This document shows, one piece after another, positions 897 through 53,093 of a DNA stretch of 64,000 bases. The translations under genes and the position numbers were made by a program. The stretch is from Octopus sinensis (lineage: Eukaryota): assembly GCF_006345805.1 (NCBI RefSeq), contig NW_021832430.1, positions 186,001 to 250,000 on the forward strand, read 5' to 3'. Under the pieces are notes generated by a model, which saw only the letters and a program-made list of their open reading frames with translations, had not been told where the DNA came from and ran no database searches. Every line of letters starts with the position of its first letter. Within the stretch, counting starts at the first letter, position 1.

Positions 897-2760
897 ATGT
901 ATTATCTCTTCATATTGATTGCTCAGATGAAAGCTTTTTGCTTTCCTCCAGTAATGGAAATGTTTGAGACGAATTTTATTTTTATAAAAGAACACAACAG
1001 CATAACCTGCCCAATAAAATCGTCTTCTTCTGATAATTACAAGTATTTGATTACTGTATGACATATTCAGGTGGACTAAAGACGGGGTTCCTATTAGATT
1101 GAATAATTCATTGTATCGTACTCATGGAAGAAATCTTGTTCTCTACGGGAGTTCAGTTGACACACAAGTTTTTGAATGCACTGTCGAGAATAAATGTGGA
1201 AAAGAAACATCTCTTCCATTTAAAGTGGATTATCTAAAGCTAGAACACAGTATATTTGTGACCAGTGACGAGTTTAGATTTTTATACTCATCATCAGCCG
1301 TTTACAATTCTCAGCACTAAGGGCATTAATGATAACTGCACTTGGTTCGAAAAAAATTACCGGTCGTCAGAATTTTATCGATTTCGTCCACATATTGGTG
1401 AACGAATATTTGAACTTGACAACGACATGTACTTTAGATTTTTTTGTGAATACGACTCGTTTTCTCAGTACATGTGCGATTTTAAGCACGGAAAAATGTT
1501 ATTTAATTTCAAATATGCCATGAAAGGTTTTTTTGTAATTTTAAACAAAAAAGAAACCAACTTTGAACCAGTTCCCTTTTTTCCAAAAGGAGAAAATATA
1601 AAACTTGAGTTTGGAAAATCCCACAAAATTACTCCTTGTATATTTTTTGGATGGTTTTTTTAAAAAATATATTTTTAGGGGAATTAATATAATAAATTAT
1701 TATCAGAATGATTATTTTATGGGACGCAACAGGATAACGTTGAGTTCACGAAACAAAGAGGATATATATGAATTCTATGGAATTCCTAGCTTCAACGGAA
1801 ACCCTTTAAATGACCGCAGGCTAAATTTTAGAGTTAGTTTTTACGGTTTGATTGTATAAAATATTCACAGAATTGCCTTCTATTTCCGACAAATTTCATT
1901 CACTGAATGCTACTATTGGAACAACAGCAATCTTTGAATGTTTTCCGAAATCAGGATACCCAAAGCCTACAATAAAGTGGTACTTGGATTCTGAGGAATA
2001 TCGTATTTTATGTTTTTATTAGATTTAGAGACAAAATTGTATTCTTTTGAGGTGTCTTTGAATGATAATAGCACGATATTAACTTTCTACAATATAACTC
2101 GATCAATGAGTATTCGCTGTCTCATAAAAAACAATTTTGGAAAAGCTGCAAGGACTGTTTACCTCAAAGTAACAGAAAAACCGACAATTTTTATGTCGCA
2201 CTCATCTCCAGTCGAAATAAGTCAATTTAACCAACATGTTATTAAATGTTGGGGAACTGTCGATCCAATTCATAAATTGCAGATAAACTGGTTATATAAC
2301 AACGAATTGATAAAAAGAGATATAACAAATTCAAACTATTTAATAAAAAATTCAAAAGTCGGAAGTGAGTTTTTATTTACCCTGTCGTCTAATCAGTTAC
2401 AAAAAATGAAGAAGAAAGTAGTACCTTTAACCTGTATCATATTTGATGAAACATCACAAGTAAATCAAACAATAGAAATTTTAATAAATTATGGTGAGTT
2501 TTTCTAATGTCATAAATCTAGTTGAAATTGTATCAAAAATGGCAGTCTTTTGGGTCGTTTTTGGAATTTTGGGAATTATTGGAATTTTTTTATTTGTTGC
2601 ATTCGTTTATATTCGGAGAAGGAGTTTAAAATTATTGGCGAATAAATTGTATTGTTTTAGTCATTTTTATTTCAGCTTTAATGACCCTGCAAAGCTAAGA
2701 GACTTTTGGGTTGAAGAATTGGAATGCTTTTCAAATTTTCAAAATGTTCCCCGCACTTAG
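897..2760 (+). CDS. IgSF type-I membrane protein, paralog A (549 aa; signal peptide, ~5 Ig-like domains, TM, short tail)
   Basis: Manual splicing of 8 GT-AG introns (1043-1070, 1250-1277, 1527-1553, 1654-1678, 1846-1870, 2003-2028, 2494-2521, 2649-2675) gives a 1650-nt open frame. Motifs: MYYLFILIAQMKAFC signal, CPIK..WTKDG..FECTVENKCG, FECFPKSGYPKPTIKWY..CLIKNNFG, and a hydrophobic TM followed by RRR. Confidence 0.85.
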
Positions 2761-2949
2761 GGTTTTAAAAAAATAAACAAAAAATAATTAAAATTTATTT
2801 CACCGGCCGTAGGATGGACGGCGCCGTTGAGTGGACACTAAGCAATATTTTTAATTAAAAATATTTTTACAATAATAATCTCGATTAAAAATCAAAATTA
2901 TTTAAATAATTTTAAATAATTTTCCTAATTTTTGTTTAAATTAAGAATC

Positions 2950-3690
2950 GCGTGAGAATGGTTTTGTTGTATCTATTGCAATCCTTTGTTGAAAAATTAA
3001 TTAATTATATTGAAACTGGCTTGATAGAAGATGAAACACAGAGGAAAGAACGTTTTAAAATACGTTCTCTCTCAAAAAATTTTATTTATGAGCAATCTGT
3101 GCTTTTCATTCTGAAAAATGGTAAAAAACTAAGATTCTTCACTATCGAAAAAAATGAATTTAAGATGAAAACAATTGAGGTAAATATAAAATCAAATTTT
3201 GTAGGCTGAACACAATTTAAACCATTTTGGTCGTGATAGGCTTTATTCCAAACTCTGTGAAGAAATTTATCCGATTACGAGAAAAGAGGTCCTTACTATT
3301 GTAGGCCGGTGTGAAGTTTGCCAGGTTTAATATTTATGAGCAATATAGGCGATGCGTTTGATGGCCACTAAACCAACTATTACTCCTATTATAGCTTATG
3401 AATTAGAACAGAGAAATAATGTAGTAGAAAATTTAGAAAAAGCAGGAGCGAAAATGTCTAAAAAAAGGAAATGGAAATTCGACGAAGAGGATATAAATGT
3501 CGGAGATTCTGTTATTATCCGACATGATAGAGACGCAAATGTGAATAATAGGAAATATCCTCTTCACGATGAAATATCTTCAGAGAAATTTTATATCGTC
3601 GACAAAAAAATAATTTATGTGTGTTAAAAGATGAAAATGGAACAGAAATTGAATCCATTCACATTAGTAGACTCAAACGATTAGTTTAAA
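2950..3690 (+). mobile_element. Internally deleted Ginger-like integrase gene with two tiny introns
   Basis: Removing 3180-3204 and 3325-3348 joins KTIE|AEHNLNHFGRDRLY..CEVCQ|AMRLMATKPTITPIIA (HHCC zinc motif + linker). The catalytic core is missing. The C-terminal GDSV-like domain is present and frameshifted. Confidence 0.7.
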
Positions 3691-4339
3691 TGTTTGGTTA
3701 ATAAAATTTTAAAAATTGTATAAAAAGTTTTTCAACTTAAGGCCGAAGGCCGCATAGGGGAATAGTTGGATTCCAAAAAAATCCGGCCGTAGGGCAATTG
3801 GTTTAGGTTGGACTTACTACCTGAAAGCCTAAGGCTGGATAAGAAGTAATACGTGTGCAGCAATTAAGGTTTGGTTAGGGTTCCCTTTAGAAATCTGTAC
3901 TGGTCATCTCTAAAATTGCTGTTAGGATACCAACGTCTATTTTATTTAATTTGACATCTTATATTCTATTTCATTGTTTTGATGATCTTTTCAAGGCCGC
4001 AAAGAAAAAATATTCGAGAAATGTAATTTTTATTAGAAATTTCAAATGTAACCGAACGTAACCGGTTGAAATTTATTGAGGACGGAGTTCGGCGTCAGTT
4101 TTAGAAATGTCAGCATTGAAATGTAATCTTGAATTCATTTCATTGGATGTGCACAAATCTTCAAACCAGTATGCAAGATGAGCTGCACTGCAAGGGTATT
4201 GGGATTCCAGCTTCCATAGTCAATCGAGAAATCATGTCCTTTATATGACTCAGACTTCTAATCGGTTTAAAAGAACTAATCCCACATTTCATTCTCATAA
4301 ATTGACAATGCAAGAGCGTTGTCTCGCGTGGGAAACTTC

Positions 4340-4480
4340 CGTGAGTCATCTGGGGGCATCGGATGTTTGTTTTTGTTCCAAAATAATTTAATTTAGATTG
4401 TCGAAACCTTGTTCCAATTATATATTCTGTTTTCTCAGCGTTTATTTTTAAGAATGATATTGCAAATTTTTTGGTCAATT
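4340..4480 (-). mobile_element. LINE RT C-terminal fragment (CR1/L2-like); duplicated near 28950-29050
   Basis: FLKINAEKTEYIIGTRFRQSKLN resembles the LKLNxxKTEYIIIGTRQ motif at the end of the LINE RT domain. Confidence 0.5.
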
Positions 4481-4862
4481 TATTTACAGTACTTTCTAAT
4501 TAGTAGGTAATGCATTTCTGAAATCTCAATAATAAGAATATTGGCATTATTCAGTATTCATTACAGAATATACGATATTAAACCGTTCGCTCGTTCTTAG
4601 AGATTCTCCACTCAATAGGCAAAGCCTTGGAAGGTTTTATAAAGGCCGTGGATCTGGAGCCCAATTACAAGTCGGCGACTAACACCCATGTGTGTGGTGA
4701 CATAGTCATGTCATGGAAAAGCACTAAGTATCTTGTGTGATTGAGAGTCTAATCTTATTAATCACACCCGAAACGAGAAAATGTGTAGTGAAATGTGTGC
4801 GTAGTAGGGCAGCAGTGTTATGCAAAACTCTCAATGCACAGAACATAGTCAATACCTTAAAC

Positions 4863-5790
4863 CAGTGGTTCCCAACCTTAAGGTGCTCGCGGAACCCTTT
4901 TGGGCTAATTAATTTTTTGCGGAACCCCTCCAATTCAATTATTATAATTTCACTTAAAACATAATAGTAATAACCAAAAACAATTTTAATGTGAACATTG
5001 AGGTAATTTTTTATCATAGCATAGTTGTGTAACGTTAGGAGTTATTGTTGACAACTGTATCCTCATATCAGCGGAAGCATTAAGTTTATTTCTATATTTT
5101 GTTTTGGTGGATGTATATATTGAAAACCCAGACTCGCATAAGTAAGTCGTTGGAAAAGGTAATAGTTTACGTATAGCCTTTTCTGAGATATCTGGATATT
5201 TTGAAATGTATCCCCTCCAAAAATTAAAAAGGGATTCATTTTTATATAACTGATATGACGCTGATTCTGATGTCAAATCAATAAGATGTTCATATAAAAC
5301 TGCCAATCCTTCAGTAGATTCATCAATTTAAATAGCGAAACCATTCGAATTATTCAAACGAATTAGTAAATGTGTTTCAATATTTTCCGAAAGTTCCTGA
5401 ATTCGCCTTGAAATAGTATTATTTGACAAAGGAACAAGATCCAGTTTCTTAGACATTTGTTCGCCATAAATACACTCGATGATTTTTTTTGAACATGGCT
5501 TTATAAGATTTTCGGCAATTGTATGTGCCTCTCCACAACGTGCTACAAGATGACTCACCTGTTTGATTAAAATAATTATATACTTCATAAGATGCTCTGG
5601 TCGATTTTAAATTGTCGTCTTTCGCAAAATTAGACATTTCCAAGTTGCACCTTGTAGATGAATTTAATTTGTTTTGAAAAAAGGAAATATCTTTATCCTT
5701 TAAATGAGGATGCTTCATCAATAAATGTCTTGATAGTTTGGCAGGAACAAGAGATGTGTTAGGCATTATATGATGGCATATTACACATTC
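4863..5790 (-). mobile_element. Degraded hAT (Buster/Charlie, ZBED5/SCAND3-like) element
   Basis: TIR-like cagtggttcccaacc at 4863. Frameshifted transposase pieces include LVPAKLSRHL, HTIAENLIKP, LSNNTISRRI and the dimerisation motif LPFPTTYLCESGFS. The partner TIR was not found. Confidence 0.85.
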
Positions 5791-6639
5791 TGCCGTATGT
5801 GGTAAATCAGATCCATTCTGAGAAAACCCATATGAGAGGTAGCTTTCATCATATTTTCTTTTCTAACTTAACCACTGACAATATCGCAATCATAATTGAA
5901 AATGCTCTAAAATCTAATACTAACTTACAACACAGCCGTTACAATAGGTGCAAAAGAGTTTCCGTGGACGAATATCGTCTTGATTTAAAAAATTCTCTAA
6001 TTGAATTCAACATCAACAGCTTTCGCTTTTCAGACGCTGCAGTAAATAATTGATTACAGATCAAACAACTTCAAAATTCAAAGAATCTAAAGGACATGAA
6101 TACCTTGATATAAGAAAACTTGAAATCTGATGAATTTGCCACTTCTGGTTAAAATACCCCGTTCAATCCGATTTAGCAGGCAAATACGGTAATAGAATAT
6201 TACATTTTATTCATCTAACAAAAATGATTTGAAAGTTGCCAAATCTCGAAAAAGCTATCATTCACTTAATCTATACCGACTTTAAATGCAGATGAGGTCT
6301 CGAAATGTATTAAAACTCGAAAAACTCCCTTTCCACGAGTGCTAACAACATTTCAATCTACCATCTTAAGAAACTTTGCCCTGACTCCATATATGCCATA
6401 GTGTATATTTACAACAATTCTGTTAAAAAAACAAAATTCTTTCCCCTTAAAAGAAATCACGCCTCCTTCCATTAACCAAACCAAACGGCTTAATATCAGG
6501 CCAGAAAGAAAAAAATATCCCTTAATAAAAAAAATTATCCCCTAATTATCACTTAATATCAGGTCAGAAAGAATTAGAAACCCATAATTGATGACCAAGA
6601 ATCAGAAAACTAAATTACAGCTTTTTAAAAAGGACGACT

Positions 6640-6810
6640 AAATCTCAATGAGCACCTAGACCCATTCGTAAAAACTCTCAGAGGACTCGATACAGACATC
6701 ACGCTCTATGAAGCTATTTCAGTCTTGAGCAAGTTGAAATATGGCAAAGCTTCGGGACCAGACAACGTGAATACAAAATTATTAAAATATGCACCGATAG
6801 AGTTCTAAAT
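6640..6810 (+). mobile_element. LINE RT N-terminal fragment
   Basis: LSKLKYGKASGPDNVNTKLLKYAP (KAxGPD motif preceding RT domain 0). Confidence 0.6.
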
Positions 6811-7079
6811 ATATCAAGTAAACTTTCCGGAGTCTCTTGCTTAATAACATTTAGCAACATTGTGAATTCGCATTTTTTATAATTCGTTAATCATCCAAAT
6901 GTTCCAGTTCGCTGAGGTCCTCTTCATCACTACTGTTATTAGCCCAGAAACTCTCAAAAATTGCATTTATTATAATATCCGAATCAATCAGACTTTATCA
7001 GATGTTTTTTTTCCAACAGTCATATTCCAAAGCTTTTTCAGAACAATGTGTCTGTAATCTCGTCCCATGCCTTATTAGC

Positions 7080-7770
7080 TAATCGTGAATCGCCATGAAA
7101 TATTCTACTCGAATTGTTTTTTTGGCAAGCCAGGCGGTGTTGGTCAAGGTATACCAAAAGGTCAGACACACGAGCTCTGGATGCAATAGAGTTCCAGGAA
7201 ATTTGAACGAGAAATCTCCAGGCCTCTCAGGAAAGGAGCGATCCCAGGTAGCGAGCCCATCTGAAGAGCACCGGTCATGCAAGATCCGAAAGTTTTGTGG
7301 TAGATTTCAGAGGCCAGGTTGTTGCACATCGAAAGGAAGGATAGATATGCCAGCAGTGCCAAATCGGATGCAGTACGGATTCTCGCACCTCCGAATCTCA
7401 GTGGGAGCAAACATTGAGCCCACCCCGGAGCATCAAGGCGGACGTTGAGGACTGATTTAGCGGCTTTTTTCAGAATGATGTCGTATGCAAAAAGTAGATC
7501 CATTTGCAAGAAACAGGGATTGCTTCGGAGAGTAAGTTTCGGCAGATGGATGCTGTTCCTCAGAAGGAAAAAAGCAGTGGTTAAGTCCAGGATAGAACCC
7601 CGATAAGTAGGTCACGAAGGACACAGTCAAAAGCCTTTGATATATCGATACCAAGGATAACCGTAGCTTTTTTAAATTTCTGCTGGACAGCGCAGCGCCA
7701 TCTGTGACTCCAGACTATATCAGCTGTGGATTTTCCAGCCCTGAATCCGCTGTGACTGGGGGAGAGATAT
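7080..7770 (-). mobile_element. CRE-like non-LTR retrotransposon fragment
   Basis: WAQCLLPLRFGGARIRTASDLALLAYLS matches the post-RT LPxRxGGLG region typical of CRE-clade elements. Confidence 0.7.
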
Positions 7771-8139
7771 TCATTAACAGCTCGGGTTATGAGAACGAAT
7801 GTAACGAGTGAGAAAGTTTACGAATTAATATAACGTGTTAAAAATTGATTAGGTTTTATTTTACAAATTAGAGTTTATAAAAAATAAGTAATAAGTAATT
7901 AATTAAATATTCAGTTTGGCTGTATTATTAATAACTAATTATTTTTAAATCTGTCGGAGGTCAATCGACTTTCGCAACCTATTATTGATCTTTAAAGCGT
8001 TTAACGGCAACGGCTCATTGTCAACCTGGGCTCATTACAAACCTGTCACAATTAATATAACTTCCATTTTTGGATACAGTAATTTGAACCTTCTTCCTAT
8101 TATTTTCCTTATTACATGGAAAAATAAAGCGTATAAATA

Positions 8140-10046
8140 ATGCTTAATTTTCCGCTCACTTTAATTTTATTCTTCAGTCAAACAAAAAATATATGTATTC
8201 CTCCAACTATGGAAATGACCCCAACTATTTTCATCCCAAATATAAAAAATCACACCATAAAATGTCCAATTGATGCAATTCCAGCTATTGAATACCAGTA
8301 TGTTCTATTATCACATGTTAGATGGACTAAAAATGGAGTTCCCATTTCATCTGAATATAATGAGTTTTATCATATAGATGGTCGAGATCTCGTATTTAAT
8401 CAACCGTTCGTCACCGAAGGCATTTTTAAATGTTCTGTCAAAAATCAATGTGGCCAAGAGACTTCGCTCTCAGTCACAGTAAACGCTATAAAAAAAGAAA
8501 CGAGTATCTTTATAATCATGAATAGTTATAGTGATATATAAAGACAAGTATTTCGCCGTTCTCAAAGGCAAAACCTTTGATTCCAAATGTTTGTGGTTTG
8601 AACATTCTGAAGACGGTATAAGAAACCTAATTGATGAACGTGGACCGATAAACAATAGATTGTTTGTGTTGGATAATGATCTTTACATAAAATTCTTTCG
8701 TAAAACTGATCCTTACTTATACTACTGTATGTTGGACTTACAACCCATGAGAATATTTTTTTTTGAAAATTTCAAATCAGGTTTCTTTCAATTTTTTTAA
8801 AAAAAGATTCCTGTTTTTTAATTCCTCACTTTCCAAAAGGACGGCACCTTCAAATTCTTCTCGGAAGCACTGAAGAACTTATTCCCTGTTTGTTTTTTGG
8901 AAGGTTTTGTGAATTATTGATTTTAGGAATTATGACAAAATTGAATATTTTGAAGAAAAAAATTTAGTAGGAACTAACTTTTTGATCGTGAATTCGACCA
9001 TCGATACGCAATTCAAATCATTTTCTTGTGTTCCTTCATTCGAGGGGGTTTCTTTATTTCACTATTCAGAGAACTTTTTCGTATCCGTATATGGTTTAAA
9101 TTTGTTAAATATTTACAGAATTGCCTTCTATTTCCGACTCATTTCATTCATTAAATATTACAGAAAAAGAAGTGGCAAAATTTGAATGCTTACCAGCATC
9201 TGGCTATCCCAAACCCGAAATAAAATGGTATGCAAATTCCATCAAAATAAGTATTTATTCTCGTAATTCTATTTAGATACAAACTCGCATGATTTTTCCT
9301 TTGCTTTATTTAACGATTCTACAGTTCTATACGTTTTTAATCCACATAAGTCAATGAGTATTCGGTGCATTGTTGCAAATATACATGGAAAAGTGGCAAA
9401 AACAGTTTACTTGAATATCATCCAATTTCCAACAATATCATTATCAGATCCACATATAATCAAAATATCTGAGTTAAAAAAAATATCATGTAAAGGAACA
9501 GTTGATCCATTTCGAAAATTAACATTTAAATGGTTATACGATGGGAAAGTGATAACAAAAAACAACAATTTAATAAAAATTATGGAAACTGAAAAAAACA
9601 AAACCAATTTTGTATTTACCCCGTCGTTAGAAGAATTAAAAAGAATTGATAATATGCAGAAATCTCTTACCTGCGTTGTATCCGACGGCTTTTTACAAGT
9701 AAATAAAACAATAAACGTTACCTTTTTGTATGGTAAGTTTGTTTAATGAAAATGGTGTAGTGGAAAATTTGTGGGAAAAGACTCAGACAAACTTTCTTTG
9801 GATTATTCTTACGATAGGTTTTTTGATGGGAAATTTGTTAATTGGATTAGTAATTTGTCAGTACAAAAATTACTCAGGTTATATTATGAGAATATATTTT
9901 TAGTTTTTGGAAAATCTTTCGCGATTTGTTTGAATATCAAGATTTTCAGATTCAAGAAATTTCGAGAACCCAAAACTTTTTTTCTTGACGATCCAGACTT
10001 TATTCCAAGTTATCGAAAAGTGATATCCAAGATGCGTCTAAAATAG
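8140..10046 (+). CDS. IgSF type-I membrane protein, paralog B (~568 aa)
   Basis: Eight GT-AG introns of 22-28 nt at positions equivalent to gene A restore one frame (intron 2 acceptor is ambiguous, 22 or 28 nt). Motifs: signal peptide, KCPIDAIP..WTKNG..FKCSVKNQCG, FECLPASGYPKPEIKWY, ISCKGTVDP..LTCVV, and a TM near 9790-9860. Confidence 0.85.
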
Positions 10047-11619: not shown

Positions 11620-11790
11620 GTTAGATATTTTCACGGTGAAAGATTTTGTTTGGCGAACATTATACCCGCGATAAATTTAGGGGTGGAAGTGTTCTAGCCT
11701 GTGGCTGTATTTTGTCTAAAGGAGTAAGCCGGCTCGTTTTTATTGATGGGATTATGACGGCTGCAAATTATGTTTAAATCTTAGAACAAA
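11620..11790 (+). mobile_element. Tc1 transposase fragment
   Basis: FRGGSVLACGCILSKGVSRLVFIDGIMTAANY matches the Tc1 KxGGGSVMVWGC region. Confidence 0.65.
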
Positions 11791-11799
11791 ATTTTTCTT

Positions 11800-26289: not shown

Positions 26290-29200
26290 CAATATGCAAT
26301 TCAACACGATTCTAGTCATCTTTATGTAAAGCAAAAAAAACTGTGTCCCTAATTAGAAGACGGAAATAAAGTTTGAATAACGCCAATTATGATGAACTGA
26401 AGATCTTTAGGAAGTTGGCCAAATTTGGCTATAGTAAACGCCAATATAATTCCAAAAGACCGTAATAAATCAAAATGTATTATCTCTTCATATTGATTGC
26501 TCAGATGAAAGCTTTTTGCTTTCCTCCAGTAATGGAAATGTTTGAGACGGATTTTATTTTTATAAAAAAACACAACAGCATAACCTGCCCAATAAAATCG
26601 TCTTCTTCTGATAATTACAAGTATTTGATTACTGTATGACATATTCAGGTGGACTAAAGACGGGGTTCCTATTAGATTGAATAATTCATTGTATCGTACT
26701 CATGGAAGAAATCTTGTTCTCTACGGGAGTTCAGTTGACACACAAGTGTTTGAATGCACTGTCGAGAATAAATGTGGAAAAGAAACATCTCTTCCATTTA
26801 AAGTGGATTATCTAAAGCTAGAACACAGTATATTTGTGACCAGTGACGAGTTTAGATTTTTATACTTATCATCAGCCTTTTGCAATTCTCAGCACTAAGG
26901 GCATTAATGATAACTGCACCTGGTTCAAAAAACTTTACCGGTGGCCAGAATTTTATCGATTTCTTCCACTAGTTGATAACCGAATATTTGAACTTGACAA
27001 CGACATGTACTTTAGATTTTTTTGTGAATCCGACTCGTTTGCTCAGTACATGTGCGATTTTAAGCACGGAAAAATGTTATTTAATTTCAAATATGCCATG
27101 AAAGGTTTTTTTGTATTTTAAACAAAAAAGAAACCAACTTTGAACCAGTTCCCTTTTTTCCAAAAGGAGAAAATATAAAACTTGAGTTTGGAAAATCCCA
27201 CGAAATTACTCCTTGTATATTTTTTGGATGGTTTTTTTTGAAAATATATTTTTAGGGGAATTTATTATATAAATTATTATCAGAATGATTATTTTATGGG
27301 AGACAACACGATAACGTTGAGTTCACGAAACAAAGAGGATATATATGAATTTTATGGAATTCCTAGGTTCAACGGAAGCCCTTTAAATGACCGCAGGCTA
27401 AATTTTAGAGTTAGTTTTTACGGTTTGATTGTATAAAATATTCACAGAATTGCCTTCTATTTCCGACAAATTTCATTCACTGAATGCTACTATTGGAACA
27501 ACAGCAATCTTTGAATGTTTTCCGAAATCAGGATACCCAAAGCCTACAATAAAGTGGTACTTGGATTCTGAGGAATATCGTATTTTATGTTTTTATTAGA
27601 TTTAGAGACAAAATTGTATTCTTTTGAGGTGTCTTTGAATGATAATAGCACGATATTAACTTTCTACAATATAACTCAATCAATGAGTATTCGGTGTCTC
27701 ATAAAAAACAATTTTGGAAAAGCTGCAAGGACTGTTTACCTCAAAGTAACAGAAAAACCGACAATTTTTATGTCACACTCATCTCTAGTCGAAATAAGTC
27801 AATTTAACCAACATGTTATTAAATGTTGGGGAACTGTCGATCCAATTCATAAATTGCAGATAAACTGGTTATATAACAACGAATTGATAAAAAGAGATAC
27901 AACAAATTCAAACTATTTAATAAAAAATTCAAAAGTTGGAAGTGAGTTTTTATTTACCCTGTCGTCTAATCAGTTACAAAAAATGAAGAAGAAAGTAGTA
28001 CCTTTAACCTGTATCATATTTGATGAAACATCACAAGTAAATCAAACAATAGAAATTTTAATAAATTATGGTGAGTTTTTCTAATGTCATAAATCTAGTT
28101 GAAATTGTATCAAAAATGGCAGTCTTTTGGGTCGTTTTTGGAATTTTGGGGGTTATTGGAATTTTTTCATTTGGTGCATTCGTTTATATTCGGAGAAGGA
28201 GTTTAAATTTATTGGCGAATAAATTGTATTGTTTTAGTCATTTTTATTTTAGCTTTAATGACCCTGCAAAGCAAAGAGACTTTTGGGTTGAAGAATTGGA
28301 ATGCTTTTCAAATTTTCAAAATGTTCCCCGCACTTTGGTTTTTAAAAAAATAAACAAAAAATAATTAAAAGTTATTGTATATATCCGAAAATTTTTATAT
28401 TTTACTGTTATTTTAACGGCTTGAAAAGAACGTATAACTTTCAGCAAACTATGTTAGACATGCTTTGTTTTAGAAAGAAATTGAAAAGTTAAGAGAGTTA
28501 GATAGATGATATATTTAGGAAAAGACTTCTATTATCGAAGAATTTGGTTTTTGTTCGGAATTTCTTTTAGCGGTTGTCAGGAAATTAGCTTCGAAATTAA
28601 AAATTTTTATCTTGTAAATCAATTAGCCCTGGTAAAGTTCTTGTGCCAATATTTAATCTTCAAATATCCGTTCTTCTTCTTTTTTCGCTTATTATTGTGT
28701 TTCTTTTTAGTCTTCCCCTTATTCTTTTATCTTATTCCTAGCTATGCAAGATGAGCTTCACTGCAAGGGTATTGGGATTCCAGCTTCCATAGTCAATCGA
28801 GAAATCATGTCCTTTATATGATTCAGACTGCTAATCGGTTTAAAAGAACTAATCCCACATTTAATTCTCATAACAATGCAAGAGCGTTGTCTCGCGTGGG
28901 AAACTTCCGTGAGTCATCTGGAGGCATCGGATGTTTGTTTTTGTTCCAAAGTAATTTAATTTAGATTGTCGAAATCTTGTTCCAATTATATATTCTGTTT
29001 TCTCAGCGTTTATTTTTAAGAATGATATTGCAAATTTTTTGGTGAATTTATTGACAGTACTTTCTAATTGGTAGGTAATGCATTTCTGAAATCTCAATAA
29101 TAAGAATATATTTTTTCGCCTCATGGGCTATATTCTCAAATCAACCAAATATTATTAAAAAATCTTGTTCAAAAAAACGTGACCACTAGTGTTTTTTTAC

Positions 29201-31053
29201 TAAATTTTGGGTTTTTATAGAATTTAAAATACAACGCGATGTCATTCCAAAGTTTTCTTACCAAAAAGTATTTAATTGCGAAAAAAATTAAGAAGTAGAA
29301 ATATCGACGGGTTTGCATTTGCCGCTGTTTAGAGATAGTCAGCTCTGTGAAAAACTGGAAATGATTCTGTTTATGTCTTTCATAACGACCTCAGTGTGTT
29401 CACTAATCCTAAAGTCATCAAGTACCAGAAGTTAGCACTGAACAAAAGGTTCAGTCCAATATGTTCAACAAAGAGGACAAACACCAATGGGTCACCCTGG
29501 TGAATACCGCATTCTGACATGATAATTAGGTTTTCTTAGAATTTCGCATTCGAAATTCGTGTTATCTTTTTAGCATCATATAAAAATAACTAGAAAATCA
29601 ACATCAGGAATAAATATTTTTGTCAAATTCTGGTTTAGGTTTCAAAATAAATTTGCTGAAAAGCTATACATGATTGGAATAACCTTGTTTTAAAATTAAA
29701 GATGCTAAAGAAAACTGACATAAATTAAACAAATGAGAATTTTAAAAGGAAACAACAGATATTAAATTAATTCAGTCAAAATAGGCAACCATTAGGACTA
29801 CTGTCAGTGTCGGAATTTGGAAACCAATGTTGAATTTTAGATTTCCTGAATATTTATTGCATACTACCTTTTGTGACATCATTACCAAAAGCGTCCTTTA
29901 CTTTGTCGAAGGCATTCTATAACTAGAAAACTATAAAAGCAATACATTAACTTTCGAGCCGACATCGGTCTCTAAATAGACTGAAGACAGTATCGTGCAG
30001 ATTATCAAAACCAAGAAAAACATTCATATTTTGCTCAAATTCAAAATATAAATACAAAAATAACGGACTAATTGAACACGTTGCCGCTGCATGAATCGCT
30101 CAATTACGTTGTAAAAAGGTAAAAAATAACAAGTTTGAAAGATTCTGTGCTTTTGTTCCTGTCCTAGAATAAAACGATAATCAATTTAGTGTTTCAGTCA
30201 TTCGTATTGGCACGCCAGTTCCAGTGGAAGGAATCAAAAGATTCCTCCGTTATGCCTCCCTCCACAGCTCGTGGACACAAAGACCTCCAGGTTTCAGGAG
30301 GACCATACAGCAGCACTTCTTAAAGAGGTTCAAACCCAAGGGTCAGAAACTTACTAAGCAAAATTATTTTCTCCAATAAAACAAAATTCAAGTTATATTC
30401 ATCAAATAAAAGAAATAGTGTTAGATATTTTCACGGTGAAAGATTTTGTTTGGCACTGTTTTGCCAGAAGGGTTTACTCTTTTTGGCATGCCTCTTTTCT
30501 CGTCCTGAATTCCACCATTCCTCCACGCTAAACTTTGCATAATGGAAGAATCATTTGCGCTCTTAAATTCATCGAGCCCATGGGGCTTGCTTTCTACTGA
30601 AGAACTTTTTGCTTTTCTTCGTTTGGAGTACGCACTCCGTACTTCACCTTGTTTCCGTTTTCCTGACGAAGTCGGTGAATTTGATTTGTTGCTGCGAAAT
30701 CAGTAAAGTCTCTCGAATCCGCCGACCCAACATCATCAATATGCAGACAACATCATCATAGCCTAGACACAACCTAATCAGTCAAGCTTCTACCATTCCT
30801 CCTTTATCAGTGCAGTTTAGAAATATGGAGAACCTTCTGCATTCGTATATCAAACGTGATTACTTGTTTCTCCGTGTTCTACAACATTCAAACACATTAC
30901 TGCAATCACTCTGACCATTTCCACAGAACCAAACCAATGTAGACGATCAGGAAATAGTCCTCCATAGCTGTGTTTGTCGTTGGATTCAAATCCATCCTAA
31001 AGATGTGTCCGAATACCCTCTATCTGCATGCTGTAATTTCAAAAGAGATTGGT
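26290..31053 (+). repeat. Collinear segmental duplicate (or second haplotype) of 714-18272 with internal deletions
   Basis: Six ordered blocks match 714-2790, 4170-4541, 10058-11190, ~11462-11654, 16951-17199 and ~17968-18272. Confidence 0.9.
26475..28364 (+). CDS. IgSF type-I membrane protein, paralog C (558 aa), recent duplicate or allele of A
   Basis: Same 8 introns as A. The only indel falls inside intron 3 (26 vs 27 nt), so the frame is kept (1677 nt spliced). Confidence 0.85.
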
Positions 31054-42100: not shown

Positions 42101-42109
42101 CTCTTTTCT

Positions 42110-43023: not shown

Positions 43024-46000
43024 CAGTGGGTCAAATTAGTCTTGGGACACTTGTTTATTTTTAATAAAATTTTATTTTCGTTAACATAGCTGTTTTTATT
43101 TAATTTTTTCCAATAGTATAATAGTGCTCCTAGTTTTCTTTACATCCTAGATCATAAAAAAATTACAAAATTCGTTTTATTTATAGAAAAATTTCACATT
43201 TATTTCCAACAGATAGAATATCATGTTCCAATTAGTCTTGGGACAGTTAGTTATTTATTTACTTTTTGAAAAAATAATTGAATTGATCTACATATCGATC
43301 AACGAAATTATACTAATTCCGGATTAATTCCTATATTTAAATGATTATTAGCATTATTTGCGATTAATATTTTGTACATGCTTAAGCGAAAGGACATTCA
43401 GAAGAAATAAAAAAACTTATACTTCTTGAATATAATGCAGGAAACTCAATCCGAAAAATTTCCGAAAGTGTTCATATTCCGAAGAGTACAGTATGGAACA
43501 TTATCAATAAATGAAAATTATTTAAAACTACCAAAAATAAGCCAAGATCAGGACAACCAAAAAATATCATCTCGATCAATTTCCATAATTAGACGAAAAG
43601 TGCTTGATAATCCGAGATTATCTTGTAAACAACTCTCTACTTACTTGGGTGAGATAGGAACACCAGTATGCTCACAGACTGTTACAAATGCCCTAAGAAA
43701 AGAAGGGTTCCATAAATGTCGTCCACGTAAAGTTCCGCTGCTTACTAAGAAACACGTCCATGCACGGCTAAAATATGCCAAAAAAATTTTACTTAAAGAC
43801 GACGACTTTCTAAATAATATTATTTGGTCGGATGAAACAAAGATAGAAATTTTTGGACACAATTATACAAGCTACGTGTGGCGTAAATCGAAGGATGAAT
43901 ATCGTCCAAAAAATACCATACCAACAGTTAAACATGGAGGTGGCAGTATTATGCTATGGGGGTGTTTTTCTTCTTGGGGCGTTGGAGAACTTCATGTAAT
44001 TGACGGAATATTGAATGCTTCTAAATACTGTGATATTTTGGAAAAAAATCCATTTTCGTCAATTGAGAAATGTGGTATTGCAGAAAATTGGACATTTCAA
44101 CAAGACAATGATCCAAAGCACAGCGCAAAAAAAACTCAAAAATGGCTAGAACATTTGATTGATACCCTTGAATGGCCAAGTCAGTCCCCAGATCTTAATC
44201 CGATTGAAAACCTTTGGAAGGAATTAAAAGCCAAAGTATGGGCGCATAATCCAAAAAATATTGCGGAATTAAAATCATTTTGTTTTGAAGAATGGAATAA
44301 AATTCCTGTTGAAACTTGTAAAAAGCTTATTAACAATTATAAAAATCGCTTAAATGCAGTTTTGGAGAATAACGGATACTTTACAAAGTATTAAGTAATT
44401 TGTCCCAAGACTAATTAGTAGGGCAATTTTTTTCAGGCACTTAAAATTTATTTTTAGGACCTTAAAAATAGGCATTTTAGGACTTTATTTTTAATTTTTA
44501 GGACTTTATTCTACATTTTTAGGCACATTTTAATAAGGTATTAAATCAAAAAGTCGTAAAAATTATTTGTTATAGTAAGGTATTAAATAATTTTTGACAT
44601 TTTCCGCATTGAAACCTCTATCTTTAGTAATTAATTTTTTAAGCATAGAAAATGCTCTTTCAACGGTTGATGATGTACACTGACATTTTCTTATTAGTCC
44701 ATATTCTTCAGGGGAGATATTACTTTTCTCCATTTCTATAATTGATTCTATGTCATTTTTGTGTAATCTTTTTTGTATGTATTCATTTATTTCTGCATTA
44801 TCAGACGGAAATTTTAACAAACAAAGATCTGAATGTGCATCATTTATTGTATAACTTGTGGATTCCATTTTTTTCAATATTTGATTAAGTATCTGATAAT
44901 TTTCATTTATTTCCATTAGACTTTTTCTTAAGGTTGGCGATTCAATTATGTAACAAATGTGCAACACATGTTACATGGAACATCCTAGGATAAAGCATTT
45001 TCAATGTTTTTCCGGCTAAAAATAATTCAACAAACTACCCAAAATCATATACGGGGCTGCATCAGAAAGAAAAAGAAGAAAATTATTGCGTATAATCTCG
45101 AATTTTTTAATCTCTTCATCGATAATCTGAAGAATTGTGTTAGCAGTTACAGATTCATATAAAGGTTCACACGAATTAATAGGTCTTCTCTGGATAGCGA
45201 TATTCCCAATGAGAACAACTACAAACTTCTGTCCATTTACGTCACCCTCGTCAACAACCATAAAAATCTTTTGAGATCTAAAAATTAATCATTTGTTAAC
45301 CTTAGATCACTTTTATACTTGGATAATTTTTGTTCACTGATTGCAGGAATACAATTGCGACAGGCTGACTGGGAAGGAAGCGAAATATTCAATTTTTCAA
45401 ACAATCCCTTTAAGCTTGGATTATTGAGCTTATGAAGAGGAATGTTTGCTTCAGAAAAGGCTTTGGCAACTTCCATCGGCATACTCTGAAAGTCTTCCGT
45501 TTCGGTTTGACCGTTGAATAGGGAATCTAAGGATTGTTGGAATCCTTCATTGTTATCTAAAAAAATAATTTTAAATTACTCAAAAGCTTTAGATGTTTTG
45601 TAGATTGTCTATGCTGATCAATATAATATTTTTTTGATGCATTGACGTAGATCATACATATTTTACAATATAGACTGCCTTTAATCACTGTGAATTCTTT
45701 TACGTAAGTTTCATAGGCTTTTAGAGCTTTAGACTTTATTGTAGAACGTACACGTGGCATTTGAACACAAAAAAGTAATTTATAGCGTGCCTAATTTGTT
45801 ATTTTTAAAATATTTTTTTGTAACATTTAAAAATAATTTATTTTAAAAATTTTTAAGACCTTAAAAAAATTTTTAGGACCTTAAAAAAATTTTTTAGGAC
45901 CTTAACATTTTTTAAGCATTTAAGGCATTTATAACTCGTTGTAGATAAATCTATTTTAATTAAATTATAGCTTAAATTAATTATTTAAATAAATAGACCT

Positions 46001-46250: not shown

Positions 46251-46339
46251 TATATATCATTGACAAGACGAAAACGAAGAATTCTGGAAGTATCAGTATT
46301 CCCAGCTCAATTAATATCTTTTGTTATCCTGGTGCTAAC

Positions 46340-48289: not shown

Positions 48290-49344
48290 CTTATCACAGA
48301 TGTTTCACAGAGATCTGTCTTCATTTCAGCTTGTATTTAATTGTGTGATGTGCGACATCCTCCAAGTGGATCATTTTAACGTGGAGATGATCATTTATGC
48401 GGATAATATTTTAATTTTTGATTTTTCTATAAGCAAATCAATATCATGGAAAAGAACTCATTGTCATATTGAAAAAATTAACAAATGATGTCAGGATGAA
48501 GACTTATTTTTTGAAAAAAGGACTATTTGTTGGATTGTCCTATTGGTAAAATTTCTCCACTTCAACATGATTAAAGCGATCTTGTGAGGTAATGTCCAAT
48601 TCGATTAAATTTATATTTTTTCTTTTTGTTATACAAAAAATGTCAGGTTTATTGAATTGGACTTTCGTTTCAGTCATGATTGACGTGTCAAATCTCATTT
48701 CGACATTCTGGGTCGACATTATTGACACAACCAAATGTCTTTTCAATTTTCTGTTTCATTAAATTCCATATATTCGACATAAGTGAAGATGAATACACTT
48801 AATCACTTCATTATTTCTTTGGAGATAATCACTGTTTAGCATCCAACCACACTGCGTGACTAGATGATCAAAAGTCTGCTTGGTTTTTTGCAATGGACGC
48901 ATAGTGATCAGATGTATGTAAAGAAAAAAATCTTATCTTTCAAAAGACAGTACACGACATTTAATTCCAACATCTTTTTGGGAAAACGATTTTTAATTAA
49001 ATGCGCTAAACTCTTTTTTATAACTGAATGTTAAACAAAGTAGCTCACCCTGTCATGTATGTGTGTTACCGTCCTGGTCGCCAGTGTGGGGCGCGAAATA
49101 TTCTATCGACACGTTAAATGATTGTCAAGATCATATTTCTAAAAATAATTTCACAACTGGCATTTTTGGGGAATATATCAAACAAATAAAAAGAATCACA
49201 GTGATCTCGGAGTTTCTGAGAATTATTTTTTAGTTAATTGGCTAAAAATAAAATTTCGATGAATTTTTTTGACCATTTAGATCTTAAATCTCTGCGATCT
49301 TTGTTTAGTTTAAAATCAGTTCATCCTGCAAGGCTGAATGTTGT
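48290..49344 (+). repeat. ~1.05-kb near-identical duplicate of 62945-64000, containing RT (+) and RLE (-) scraps
   Basis: Identical ORFs at 48300/62955 and 48540/63195 apart from single substitutions. Motifs IYADNIL and FNKPDI..LIELDIT..VEVEK. Confidence 0.92.
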
Positions 49345-51142: not shown

Positions 51143-51172
51143 GCTAAATTTAGCAAAAATAAACGCCAATAT
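51143..51172 (+). promoter_or_regulatory. Candidate promoter module of IgSF gene D: palindrome GCTAAATTTAGC + AATAAACGCCAATAT
   Basis: Same layout and nearly the same distance to the ATG as 840-869. Confidence 0.5.
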
Positions 51173-51200
51173 TTAACTTACAAAACCGTTGTAAATAAAT

Positions 51201-53093
51201 ATGCTGCTTTATGTTTTTATGTTGATGACTAAAACATATTCTTTTTGTTTTCCTCCGACAATGGAAATGTCAGAAACTAATATTATTCTTAATAAGACAC
51301 ACCACACTATACACTGTCCGATAAAAGCAATTCCAGCCGACAATTATGAGTATGATTATTATTACAGATTCAGATGGGCTAACGATGGAATTCCAATTTA
51401 CATCAAATATTATATTGATGACTATAAAGCTGGCAGAGATCTTGCATTAAAAAAGAATTCCATTCATGAAGGATTATATGAATGCACTGTGAAAAATCAA
51501 TGTGGAAAAGAAACATCACTTCCTATTAAAGTAGATTCTCCAAAGAAAGATACTGGTATATTTGAAATCATTAACTATTTAAGTCTTTAATTTTTACCAT
51601 CAGCCTTATGAAATACTCAAGACTAAAGGTGTCAGTGGGAAATGTTCATGGTTCAGAAGAACTTGGGATGTGCACGAAATGTCCGCAATTGAGACACTGT
51701 CAATATCTAGAAGGCTATTCGTGGTGGACAACGATTTGTACATAAAATACTTTTTCAAAGATGATTCATTTTCTGAATACACGTGTAAACTTGAACATGG
51801 AAAAATATCATTTTATTTCAATTATAAGATTGAAGGTTTTTGCTAGATTTTAAATAAAAAAAAGAAACACAATTCGATATAGTGCACTTTTTTCCAAGAG
51901 GACAAAAAATACAACTTGAGTTTGGAATTGTCCATCAAATCACTCCTTGTATATTTTTTGGAAGGTTTTCTTGGAAATGCATATTTTAGGGGATATGATA
52001 AAATAGTGTATCATCAAGGAAATCATAAAATAGGAGCCAATACTATAATCATTAAATCACATAGAATAGATGAAATAAAAACAATTTCTTGCACTCCTGT
52101 CTTTAAAAGCACCGTCTTGTCTGAGCATAGTCATGATTTCACACTGTCCTTTTATGGTCTGTGACTGTTTAAAATATTTATAGAATTGCCGTCAATTTCT
52201 GATTCATTCCAATCAATCAATGCCACCATTGGATCAACAGCAATTTTTGAATGTTTTCCAAAAACAGGTTATCCACAACCTACAATAAAGTGGTATTTGG
52301 ACTCTGTGGAATATCGTATTTTAAGTAAAAATTACTTTTAGAAACGAAAAATTATTCTTTTGATTCGCGTTTGAATCATGACAACACACAATTAATTTTT
52401 CGCAAAGTAGCCCAATCGATGAGTGTTCGATGCCTTATTAAAAATAATTTCGGAATAGTTGCCAAAACTGTTTACCTTAAAGTAACGGAAAAACCCCAAA
52501 TATACATGTCCCACTCAGGTCGCAATAAAATTACTCAATTTAATCGACCCGTCTTTTCATGCAAAGGAACGGTCGACCCAATCTTTAAATTACAAATAAA
52601 TTGGTTATATGACGGAGAACGGATAGAAAGTGATAAACAAAATTCCGACTTTTTGATAATGAATAATGAAATCGAAAGCGAATTTTTATTTACACTTTCA
52701 TCTGACCAACTTAAAAAAATTAATAAAAAAACAGTAACTTTAACTTGCATTGTGTCCGACGGAATATCAAGGGTAAATCAAACAATAAATGTTTCATTTA
52801 ATTATAGTGAGTTTTTATAATGATATGTTCCTAGTTGAACATGGACTGAAAATGCATGTCGTGTGGATTCTTTTTGGGATATTCTTGATGAATGGGATTA
52901 TATTATCTGCTATATTTATTTATATTCGAAGAAGTCACAAATGTTTATTTCAAAATACTCCGTATGGTTTTCTTATCAATTCTTTAGATTGAAAAATCTT
53001 CAAAAGCAAAACTTCTGGGTTGAAGATTTGGAATGTTTTTCAACTTTTCAAACCTCTGTAGGAATGGAATCGAAAATAGTCGAAAAAACGTAG
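51201..53093 (+). CDS. IgSF type-I membrane protein, paralog D (559 aa)
   Basis: Introns 51350-51373, 51556-51583, 51836-51864, 51965-51989, 52157-52183, 52316-52341, 52807-52834 and 52962-52987 (24-29 nt) give a 1680-nt frame with signal peptide, Ig domains, TM and an NFWVEDLECF tail. Confidence 0.87.

What the first reader, a model, noticed from the sequence alone, without database searches (positions are those of the whole stretch)
897..53093. Four intact, co-oriented paralogs of an unrecognised multi-Ig surface receptor family hidden by 22-29 nt introns
None appears as a long ORF. Each reads through only after removing 8 tiny GT-AG introns at equivalent positions (spliced lengths 1650, 1707, 1677 and 1680 nt, all multiples of 3). 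The architecture is signal peptide, ~5 Ig-like domains, TM, and a ~45-aa tail with an F(W/F)(V/L)(E/D)(E/D) motif and no visible kinase or ITAM. Domains 2-3 are atypical and highly diverged, and A/C lack the second Cys of domain 3 kept in B (FSCVP) and D (ISCTP). All four remain intact among otherwise dead transposons, which points to selection. A diversifying family in a transposon-rich compartment resembles parasite contingency gene families or allorecognition loci such as Hydractinia Alr (analogy only). I cannot assign a known ortholog.
Basis: partly seen in the sequence, partly recalled or inferred. Interest (0 to 1): 0.8.

Follow-up and report, generated by a model that had tools for sequence, protein, structure and literature searches.

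The report
Four diverged L1-like adhesion receptor genes
Four neighbouring genes, readable only after removing eight tiny (23-29 base) introns each, encode related five-Ig-domain membrane proteins that look like very diverged relatives of the L1/neuroglian cell-adhesion family, probably in a dicyemid parasite, with one domain changing unusually fast between the two youngest copies.

Summary
Four co-oriented genes (A 897-2760, B 8140-10046, C 26475-28364, D 51201-53093) each read through after removing eight GT-AG introns of 23-29 nt. Each encodes a signal peptide, five Ig-sized modules, one TM helix and a 40-51 aa tail.

The family is not without relatives. A profile of the four proteins aligns colinearly, from N-terminus to TM, with five-Ig "L1-like" proteins of molluscs and annelids (hhalign 99.7%, E 4e-27). 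Ig1, Ig4 and Ig5 each match their cognate domain best. Identity is only about 17%, the margin over generic Ig arrays is small, and L1's FN3 repeats and FIGQY tail are absent. Domains 2 and 3 match nothing on their own.

Selection is supported: deep pairs give dN/dS 0.35-0.42. Between the recent duplicates A and C, Ig1/4/5 replacements run 5x below the neutral flank rate. Domain 2 runs 2.4x above it, concentrated in a 21-codon patch.

The contingency or allorecognition reading is untested. The neighbourhood also holds a VPS41 gene and an uninterrupted Tc1/mariner ORF, so it is not only dead transposons. No transcript evidence was available.

The parts
897..2760 (+). Gene A: 9 exons, 8 introns, CDS 1650 nt, 549 aa. 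Signal peptide, Ig1, domain 2, domain 3, Ig4, Ig5, TM, 40-aa tail.
   Evidence: Model. Pfam Ig_2 at residues 26-101 and I-set/Ig_3 at 283-372. TM segment and Cys pattern.
8140..10046 (+). Gene B: the most diverged paralog (34-37% aa identity to A and D). CDS 1701 nt, or 1707 nt with acceptor 8525. 566 aa. Keeps both Cys of domain 3. Tail motif FFLDD.
   Evidence: Pfam Ig_2 2.5e-14 and I-set 5.3e-14. Lies inside a 5.5-kb segment (4542-10057) that is absent from the duplicated copy downstream of C.
26475..28364 (+). Gene C: recent duplicate of A (97.3% DNA identity over 714-2799 vs 26290-28376). CDS 1677 nt, 558 aa. The stop codon lies 27 nt further downstream because TAG became TTG.
51201..53093 (+). 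Gene D: CDS 1680 nt, 559 aa, 50% aa identity to A. Keeps both Cys of domain 3.
   Evidence: Pfam Ig_3 2.6e-15 and I-set 2.8e-13.
1349..1411 (+). Fast-evolving patch of domain 2 (codons 133-153 of A; the counterpart in C is 26927-26989). Nine of the 21 codons differ between A and C, all by amino-acid replacement.
   Evidence: pN 0.235, pS 0.035, neutral flank 0.034. Fisher p = 1.3e-7 against the flank (the window was chosen post hoc). Codon alignment.
857..869 (+). Conserved upstream 13-mer TAAACGCCAATAT (contains CCAAT), 28-29 nt before the ATG of A. Identical copies lie at 26435-26447 (gene C) and 51160-51172 (gene D).
   Evidence: Exactly 3 matches in the window, all at this position; 0.11 expected by chance. 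Upstream alignment. A promoter role is inferred.
26290..31053 (+). Copy 2 of a segmental duplication of about 4.8 kb (gene C plus 2.7 kb downstream). Copy 1 is split into 714-2799, 4170-4541, 10058-11190, 11462-11654, 16951-17199 and 17968-18282 by intervening blocks.
   Evidence: Self-BLAST. 2475 nt of non-coding flank, 3.4% diverged, served as the neutral reference. Junction sequences.

Best explanation
The locus is a tandem, co-oriented cluster of four functional paralogs. They encode single-pass type I membrane proteins of the immunoglobulin superfamily, and they sit in a metazoan genome with ultra-short introns, most likely a dicyemid.

The proteins are best read as strongly diverged, lineage-expanded relatives of the five-Ig 'L1CAM-like' adhesion molecules found in molluscs and annelids.

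Shown here:
- The gene structures.
- The architecture: signal peptide, five Ig-sized modules, TM, short tail.
- Recognisable I-set/Ig domains at positions 1, 4 and 5.
- Colinear, cognate-domain similarity to the spiralian L1-like proteins.
- Purifying selection on Ig1, Ig4 and Ig5.
- Faster-than-neutral replacement in a patch of domain 2 between the two youngest copies.
- Birth-and-death dynamics: a segmental duplication, and a 5.5-kb block carrying gene B that is present in only one copy.

Inferred:
- The proteins act as cell-surface adhesion or recognition molecules.
- As in L1, contactin, hemolin and Dscam, the N-terminal domains fold back on each other.
- The paralog-variable domains 2-3 set binding specificity.
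- Ig4-Ig5 serve as a conserved stalk.
- The conserved tail motif F-W-V-E-[ED]-L-E-C-F (FFLDD in B) binds an intracellular adaptor.
For: - Gene models, conserved intron positions and phases.
- Chance control.
- Pfam Ig_2, I-set and Ig_3 above their cut-offs.
- TM and signal-peptide hydrophobicity.
- PDB profile search led by neurofascin (8e-15), Robo1 and contactin-1/2.
- Exhaustive HMM search of 1.84 billion representatives. No close family member was found. The hits include spiralian five-Ig proteins of 616-683 aa.
- Names from sources: 'neural cell adhesion molecule L1-like' (Gigantopelta), Lottia V4AK02 and Owenia A0A8S4N1V4. The Owenia protein carries the L1 Bravo_FIGEY tail.
- hhalign of the two four-protein alignments: 99.7%, E 3.9e-27, residues 7-512 against 22-578.
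- These proteins rank top among 121 Ig-rich proteins.
- Single-domain profiles: Ig1 matches Ig1 best (93.8%), Ig4 matches Ig4 (97.7%), and Ig5 matches only Ig5 (95.5%). The weak best match of domain 3 falls in Ig3.
- The best single-domain hits for Ig4 and Ig5 include NRCAM (Sepia) and neuroglian-like proteins (Haliotis, Limulus).
- Selection.
- Conserved upstream 13-mer.
- Tiny introns also in the neighbouring VPS41 gene.
- Organism inference. Introns under 30 bp are known among animals only in D. japonicum and myxobolid myxozoans (PMC13644364). Dicyema has median intron 27 bp (PMC6543705), GC 36.7%, 49% repeats and many LINEs (PMC6736024).
Against: - Identity to the spiralian L1-like proteins is only about 17-22%.
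- The hhalign margin over generic tandem-Ig proteins is small (scores 116-121 against about 105 for hemicentin-like arrays).
- Domains 2 and 3 have no significant match on their own. The AlphaFold model of domain 2 was unusable (pLDDT 43.7).
- No FN3 repeats and no Bravo_FIGEY tail were detected.
- There is no transcript evidence. Neither the spliced proteins nor an exon ORF are in the public protein collections searched.
- Whole-gene dN/dS for A vs C is about 0.95, so one of the two copies could be decaying.
- The domain 2 excess includes several multi-nucleotide changes, which could be single mutational events.
- The source organism was not identified directly.
Confidence: 0.6

Rival explanations
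1. A lineage-specific IgSF family with no particular relationship to L1/neuroglian. The colinear match would reflect only generic similarity between tandem I-set arrays plus a coincidentally equal domain number.
For: hhalign scores against hemicentin-like arrays are only about 10-15% lower than against the L1-like proteins. Domains 2-3 and the tail are orphans. L1 hallmarks (six Ig domains, FN3 repeats, FIGQY) are missing.
Against: The top three full-length matches are all five-Ig L1-like proteins aligned from N-terminus to TM. Ig1, Ig4 and Ig5 each prefer their cognate domain, and Ig5 matches no other domain. L1-family proteins align in register from residue 1-2. The domain 2 segment RLFVxDNDLYI..F....D....Y.C aligns to the R..ID..G.LHF.......D....Y.C segment of Ig2 in the L1-like proteins.
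Confidence: 0.25
2. One reading: a diversifying contingency or allorecognition-type family. Paralogs, and possibly alleles, would be variably or exclusively expressed, and the variable domains 2-3 would mediate self/non-self or host-interface recognition.
For: Domains 2-3 are the most variable parts in every pair. Replacement in a domain 2 patch is faster than neutral between recent duplicates, while synonymous change there is not elevated. The locus shows gene gain and loss and recent transposon activity.
Against: Only four copies were seen. Deep pairs give overall dN/dS of 0.35-0.42. dN/dS above 1 is not significant against synonymous sites. A, C and D share the same upstream 13-mer, which argues for common rather than exclusive regulation. 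A housekeeping gene lies inside the cluster. No polymorphism or expression data exist.
Confidence: 0.1
3. Some or all copies are unexpressed relics or gene fragments moved about by transposons, and they are intact only because they are young.
For: Whole-gene dN/dS for A vs C is about 0.95. Gene B sits in a 5.5-kb block that is present in only one duplicate copy and ends 11 nt after its stop codon. No transcripts or proteins were found in public collections.
Against: B, D and A/C are separated by saturated synonymous divergence (dS about 1-1.5), yet all keep open frames, splice sites, intron phases, the Cys pattern and dN/dS of 0.35-0.42. In the A/C pair, Ig1/4/5 replacements are 5-fold below neutral. 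The 5.5-kb block has no terminal inverted repeats.
Confidence: 0.05

Closest known systems
Spiralian five-Ig 'L1-like' proteins (Gigantopelta aegis XP_041362159.1, 629 aa; Lottia gigantea V4AK02, 652 aa; Owenia fusiformis A0A8S4N1V4, 683 aa)
   Same: Signal peptide, five Ig domains, one TM and a short tail. Colinear profile-profile alignment from N-terminus to TM (99.7%, E 3.9e-27). Cognate-domain best matches for Ig1, Ig4 and Ig5. Shared Ig5 signature G-T-x-D-P-x-x-x-L-x-x-x-W-[LY]-Y.
   Different: Only about 17% identity. Domains 2 and 3 of the window family are unrecognisable on their own, and A and C lack the domain 3 disulfide. The tail has no detectable Bravo_FIGEY homology, and the motif is different (FWVEE/FFLDD). 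The window family is a four-gene tandem cluster. These spiralian proteins are themselves known only from automated annotation.
L1CAM / neuroglian / NrCAM / neurofascin family
   Same: Type I IgCAM with I-set domains. Neurofascin is the best PDB match (8e-15). NRCAM and neuroglian-like proteins are among the best hits for Ig4 and Ig5. They align in register from the N-terminus.
   Different: L1-family proteins have six Ig domains, 3-5 FN3 repeats and a tail of about 110 aa with the ankyrin-binding FIGQY motif. Here there are five Ig domains, no FN3 repeats and a 40-51 aa tail without Bravo_FIGEY.
Dscam (functional analogy only)
   Same: An IgCAM in which variation is concentrated in Ig2 and Ig3. 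In Dscam those domains set homophilic binding specificity (from my own knowledge). Dscam appears among the PDB hits (1.3e-10).
   Different: Dscam has 10 Ig and 6 FN3 domains and diversifies by alternative exon arrays within one gene. Here the variation is between paralogous genes, and self-BLAST shows no intragenic exon duplicates.
Hydractinia Alr allorecognition genes
   Same: Clustered genes for Ig-like transmembrane proteins with variable extracellular domains.
   Different: No sequence relationship was found. The defining allelic hypervariability and its link to fusion or rejection cannot be examined from one haplotype.

Membership tests
Immunoglobulin superfamily (I-set type) | At least one domain scoring above the Pfam gathering threshold for I-set, Ig_3 or Ig_2 | tested here: met
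   I-set 49-52 bits (cut-off 23.7), Ig_3 53-57 bits (cut-off 30) and Ig_2 31-54 bits (cut-off 27) in A, B and D.
Immunoglobulin superfamily (I-set type) | All five modules are Ig folds | tested here: inconclusive
   Ig1, Ig4 and Ig5 are supported. Domains 2 and 3 give no Pfam or PDB hit alone, and the AF2 model of domain 2 has pLDDT 43.7. Their Ig assignment rests on size, the C-x-W ... D-x-x-x-Y-x-C pattern, phase-1 flanking introns and register in the full-length alignment.
L1CAM/neuroglian family | Six N-terminal Ig domains | tested here: not met
   Five Ig-sized modules between the signal peptide and the TM.
L1CAM/neuroglian family | Three to five fibronectin type III repeats | tested here: not met
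   No FN3 hit in Pfam at E <= 1, and there is no room between Ig5 and the TM.
L1CAM/neuroglian family | Cytoplasmic Bravo_FIGEY domain (PF13882) with the FIGQY ankyrin-binding motif | tested here: not met
   Not detected in whole proteins or in isolated tails at E <= 10. No FIGQY-like motif is visible in the tails.
L1CAM/neuroglian family | Ig domains most similar to the cognate L1-family domains, in the same order | tested here: inconclusive
   Met for Ig1, Ig4 and Ig5 against the five-Ig L1-like group. L1-family proteins align from the N-terminus. The margin over generic Ig arrays is small, and domains 2-3 carry no signal.
Spiralian five-Ig L1-like group | Architecture: signal peptide, five Ig domains, TM, short tail | tested here: met
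Spiralian five-Ig L1-like group | Significant full-length colinear profile similarity | tested here: met
   hhalign 99.7%, E 3.9e-27, 489 aligned columns. Top ranks among 121 Ig-rich proteins.
Spiralian five-Ig L1-like group | Orthology (a monophyletic grouping in a phylogeny; shared intron positions) | not testable with these tools
   No genomic DNA of the spiralian genes and no broad IgSF tree were available.
Dscam | Arrays of alternative exons for halves of Ig2 and Ig3 within one gene | tested here: not met
   Self-BLAST of the window shows only between-gene similarity and no intragenic exon repeats.
Allorecognition / contingency gene families | Extreme allelic polymorphism, or switching or mutually exclusive expression | not testable with these tools
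   A single haplotype and no expression data.

The most novel reading that the evidence does not exclude
The four genes would form a small paralog-based recognition code in an animal of about 30 cells that has very few Ig-domain genes (6 reported for Dicyema sp., PMC6543705). The fast-evolving patch of domain 2 would be under positive selection because it contacts a changing partner. That partner could be the other paralogs (cell-type sorting), conspecific parasites, or the cephalopod host's renal epithelium. On this reading a degenerate L1-type adhesion molecule has been re-used as a host-interface or self-recognition receptor.
Probability: 0.15. Interest if true: 0.7.

Novelty: new variant of a known kind. 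Interest (0 to 1): 0.42.

Why it matters
If the source is a dicyemid, these four genes would be most of the animal's Ig-domain repertoire; only six Ig-containing sequences were reported for Dicyema sp. That makes them prime candidates for the molecules that hold a roughly 30-cell body together or attach it to the host kidney.

The cluster also gives a compact natural example of several processes:
- An L1-type adhesion molecule stripped to five Ig domains and a short tail.
- Birth-and-death evolution of a receptor cluster amid recently active transposons.
- Domain-restricted accelerated evolution that can be measured against a neutral reference inside the same duplication.

Practically, it shows that comparison of paralogs can validate ultra-short introns (23-29 nt) without RNA data.

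Tried and rejected
1. The search for homologous proteins with spliced protein D returned no hit at E <= 1e-3. The word index was too insensitive. The exhaustive representative search with the exon-7 profile was needed.
2. The look-up of encoding contigs with the exon-7 ORF found nothing on record. The source assembly is therefore not in that collection, and the organism could not be identified this way.
The allowed exon-3 alignment (domain 2) gave pLDDT 43.7, so no fold search was run.
4. Pfam and PDB searches with isolated domains 2 and 3 and with the tails returned nothing.
5. Single-family HMMs of domains 2 and 3 against the 121 Ig-rich hits gave only sub-threshold matches. The best for domain 2 was a hemolin, at 7 bits.
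6. The search for homologous proteins with the VPS41 model, tried for taxonomic placement, gave one weak unnamed hit.
7. Gene conversion from B or D as the source of the domain 2 patch was considered and rejected. Synonymous divergence in the patch (0.035) equals the neutral rate rather than the saturated paralog level, and neither B nor D matches the variant codons.
8. I looked for terminal inverted repeats around the 5.5-kb block carrying B and around the Tc1/mariner ORF. None were convincing.
9. tRNA and Rfam scans, tried for taxonomic clues, found only a U3 snoRNA.

Full report
**1. Observation**

I rebuilt the four genes from the raw sequence. A search for the smallest set of 20-32 nt GT-AG introns that keeps a frame open from each ATG recovered the obligatory introns. 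Three-frame inspection and comparison between copies fixed the rest, including introns that are in frame and stop-free in one copy but frame-shifting in another.

Examples of the latter are intron 1 (24 nt, in frame in B and D, against 28 nt in A and C) and intron 3 (27 nt in A, against 26 nt in C and 29 nt in D). The final models are:

| Gene | Coordinates | CDS (nt) |
|---|---|---|
| A | 897-2760 | 1650 |
| B | 8140-10046 | 1701, or 1707 with acceptor 8525 instead of 8531 |
| C | 26475-28364 | 1677 |
| D | 51201-53093 | 1680 |

All 32 introns are GT-AG, 23-29 nt (median 26), with 22% GC against 32% in the exons. Introns 1-7 share position and phase (2,1,1,2,1,1,1) in all four genes, and exon lengths are almost identical. 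The four introns at module boundaries (2, 3, 5 and 7) are all phase 1, as is usual for Ig-domain exons (this rule is from my own knowledge).

This is far beyond chance. Of 150 random starts elsewhere in the window, 145 cannot be carried through 1840 nt by any such introns, and the other five need 9-12. The genes need 6-7. Pfam Ig matches run across the proposed junctions. The only indel between A and C inside the transcribed region lies in intron 3.

A VPS41 gene at about 35612-38594 shows the same intron style, with about 18 introns of 20-29 nt. Its Pfam hits are Beta-prop_Vps41 (1.2e-23) and TPR_Vps41 (8.8e-28). Splicing itself could not be checked.

**2. The proteins**

Each protein has:
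- a hydrophobic N-terminus;
- five modules of 83-107 aa;
- one strongly hydrophobic segment followed by basic residues;
- a tail of 40-51 aa.

Pfam recognises module 1 (Ig_2) and module 4 (I-set, Ig_3), with a second stretch in module 5. Modules 2 and 3 give nothing when searched alone, either in Pfam at E <= 10 or in the PDB.

The Ig assignment of modules 2 and 3 therefore rests on four things: their size, the C-x-W ... D-x-x-x-Y-x-C pattern, their phase-1 boundaries, and their register in full-length alignments.

B (FSCVP) and D (ISCTP) keep the second Cys of module 3, while A and C have Gly there. Pfam finds no kinase domain, and I saw no ITAM-like motif in the tails.

**3. Relatives**

A profile of the four proteins against PDB sequences is led by neurofascin (8e-15), Robo1, contactin-1/2, titin and Dscam.

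An exhaustive HMM search of 1.84 billion representative proteins with the exon-7 profile found no close family member. Nothing resembled a 550-aa paralog at high score. It found 121 Ig-rich proteins. Among them are spiralian proteins of 616-683 aa with the same architecture:
- Gigantopelta aegis XP_041362159.1, named 'neural cell adhesion molecule L1-like';
- Lottia gigantea V4AK02;
- Owenia fusiformis A0A8S4N1V4;
- an unnamed transcript-derived protein (P0065, from a Logan assembly).

The Owenia protein carries the L1-family Bravo_FIGEY tail (1.2e-19).

Profile-profile comparison of the two four-sequence alignments gives 99.7% probability and E 3.9e-27, over residues 7-512 against 22-578. That covers all five modules and the TM. 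Because any two tandem-Ig proteins align well, I ran two controls.

- Control 1: hhalign of the family profile against each of the 121 hits. It ranks three five-Ig L1-like proteins first (scores 115-121). The next are hemicentin-like arrays at about 105, so the margin is small. NRCAM and neuroglian-like proteins follow, aligned in register from residue 1-2.
- Control 2: single-module profiles. Ig1 matches Ig1 of the L1-like group best (93.8%). Ig4 matches Ig4 (97.7%, E 1.4e-12). Ig5 matches only Ig5 (95.5%). The weak best match of module 3 falls in Ig3, and module 2 has none.

My reading is that the family is a very diverged offshoot of the L1/neuroglian-type IgCAMs, closest to the spiralian five-Ig form. 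It fails three defining L1 features: six Ig domains, FN3 repeats and the FIGQY tail. I therefore do not file it as an L1-family member. I give the ancestry about 0.6.

**4. Selection and locus history**

Deep pairs (A-D, A-B, B-D) have saturated dS (about 1-1.5) and dN/dS of 0.35-0.42. Ig4 is the most constrained (0.17-0.26) and module 3 the least (0.46-0.89). That is purifying selection over a long period in every lineage.

A and C belong to a segmental duplication of at least 4.8 kb. Copy 2 is contiguous at 26290-31053. Copy 1 is split into six pieces between 714 and 18282. The 2475 nt of duplicated non-coding flank differ by 3.4%, which serves as a local neutral reference. Rates measured against it:

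| Class | Divergence | Against neutral (3.4%) |
|---|---|---|
| Synonymous sites | 2.8% | not different |
| Introns | 1.4% | not different |
| Replacement sites, Ig1+Ig4+Ig5 | 0.7% | 5-fold lower, p = 2.5e-5 |
| Replacement sites, module 2 | 7.5% | 2.4-fold higher, p = 0.004 |
| Replacement sites, module 3 | 4.5% | not different |

Twenty-five of the 35 replacements fall in modules 2-3 (binomial p = 1e-6), whereas synonymous changes are not clustered. A 21-codon patch (A codons 133-153, window 1349-1411) has pN 0.235 against pS 0.035 (p = 1.3e-7 against the flank, with the window chosen post hoc).

The normal synonymous rate in the patch argues against conversion from an old paralog and against a simple mutational hot spot. 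However, several changes are multi-nucleotide and may be single events, and dN/dS above 1 is not significant against the few synonymous sites. So both young copies are, or recently were, constrained, and module 2 has changed faster than neutral. That is suggestive of positive selection, not proof.

Gene B lies in a 5.5-kb block (4542-10057) that is absent from copy 2. There the flanking sequences abut, sharing a 2-nt AT. The block ends 11 nt after B's stop codon and has no inverted terminal repeats. Either a B-like gene was deleted next to C, or the block was inserted next to A. Either way the cluster gains and loses genes.

A, C and D share an exact 13-mer, TAAACGCCAATAT, 28-29 nt before the ATG. 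It occurs three times in the window against 0.11 expected, despite saturated synonymous divergence between A and D. This is probably part of a common promoter.

**5. Context**

Between the genes lie:
- LINE reverse-transcriptase fragments (18278-18922, 19561-20434, 25163-26236, 31213-31656 on the minus strand);
- Tc1/mariner (a fragment at 21801-22232 and an uninterrupted 322-aa ORF at 43426-44394);
- pogo-type DDE_1 (39642-40034);
- an integrase zinc-binding domain (2958-3627);
- hAT-like pieces.

Several of the blocks that interrupt copy 1 postdate a duplication that is only 3.4% diverged. If they are insertions rather than deletions from copy 2, as their transposon content suggests, transposons were active recently. 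With VPS41 inside the cluster, 'transposon graveyard' over-states the case.

**6. Source organism (inference)**

Among 51 animal genomes, introns under 30 bp were found only in Dicyema japonicum and myxobolid myxozoans (PMC13644364). Three things favour a dicyemid:
- the window's GC (about 35%), LINE-rich repeats and median intron of 26 nt fit Dicyema (GC 36.7%, 49% repeats, PMC6736024; median intron 27 bp, PMC6543705);
- Henneguya, the myxobolid whose median intron length (27 bp) fits, has 29% GC;
- the closest relatives of the proteins are spiralian.

I estimate about 0.75 for a dicyemid. No tool could confirm it. Zverkov et al. report only six Ig-domain sequences in Dicyema sp. (PMC6543705). 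If the source is a dicyemid, this cluster would be a large share of that repertoire.

**7. Mechanism**

Shown: the genes, the architecture, the constraint pattern and the remote L1-like similarity.

Inferred:
- These are surface adhesion or recognition molecules.
- The N-terminal modules may fold back as in L1, contactin, hemolin and Dscam (from my own knowledge).
- The variable modules 2-3 provide binding specificity.
- Ig4-Ig5 form a conserved stalk.
- The tail motif recruits an unknown adaptor.

The contingency or allorecognition reading remains possible but is unsupported by direct evidence.

**8. Verdict**

This is a real and carefully observed feature. The family is a diverged variant of a known kind (IgCAM, L1-like), not a categorically new one. 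The most interesting element is the domain-restricted acceleration between the two youngest copies, in an animal with almost no Ig genes.

Noticed in passing
window 35612-38594 (+): A VPS41 gene (Pfam Beta-prop_Vps41 1.2e-23, TPR_Vps41 8.8e-28) interrupted by about 18 GT-AG introns of 20-29 nt. It lies between paralogs C and D. The model comes from a simple dynamic-programming chain and is approximate, especially at the 3' end.
   Followed up: partly
window 61463-61647 (-): A full-length U3 snoRNA (Rfam RF00012, 95.8 bits, E 7e-20) lies immediately next to LINE-like ORFs (60668-61440). It may be a genuine gene or a retro-copy.
   Followed up: no
window 4542-10057: A 5.5-kb block containing gene B is present in copy 1 of the A/C segmental duplication and absent from copy 2, where the flanks abut at 29108/29109 sharing a 2-nt AT. 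The block ends 11 nt after B's stop codon and has no terminal inverted repeats. Whether it is an insertion or a deletion is unresolved.
   Followed up: partly
window 43426-44394 (+): An uninterrupted 322-aa Tc1/mariner transposase ORF (HTH_Tnp_Tc3_2 6.6e-20 and DDE_3 9.3e-10). It could be a still-active element, but no clear terminal inverted repeats were found.
   Followed up: partly
window 48290-49344 and 62945-64000: A 1056-nt direct repeat at 99.3% identity, running to the end of the window. It is a very recent transposon copy or segmental duplication. Its content was not examined.
   Followed up: no
window 44563-45760 (-) and 62252-62817 (+): Two related hAT-like transposase remnants (weak DUF659 hit, similar C-terminal ends ...ERA[FI]S.L.K[LI].[ST]K.R.F..ENV..YL[IL].YYNK). 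The first reads through with about 4 tiny introns.
   Followed up: no
window 8504-8531: Intron 2 of gene B has two in-frame acceptor AGs 6 nt apart (8525 and 8531), giving a CDS of 1707 or 1701 nt. This is a possible alternative-acceptor site.
   Followed up: partly
window 1689-1691 vs 27266-27268, and other sites in modules 2-3: Several A/C differences are runs of adjacent changes. Examples are ATA against TAT (its reverse complement), AAT against CTT, and CGC against GAC. They look like multi-nucleotide mutation events and could inflate the apparent replacement rate.
   Followed up: no
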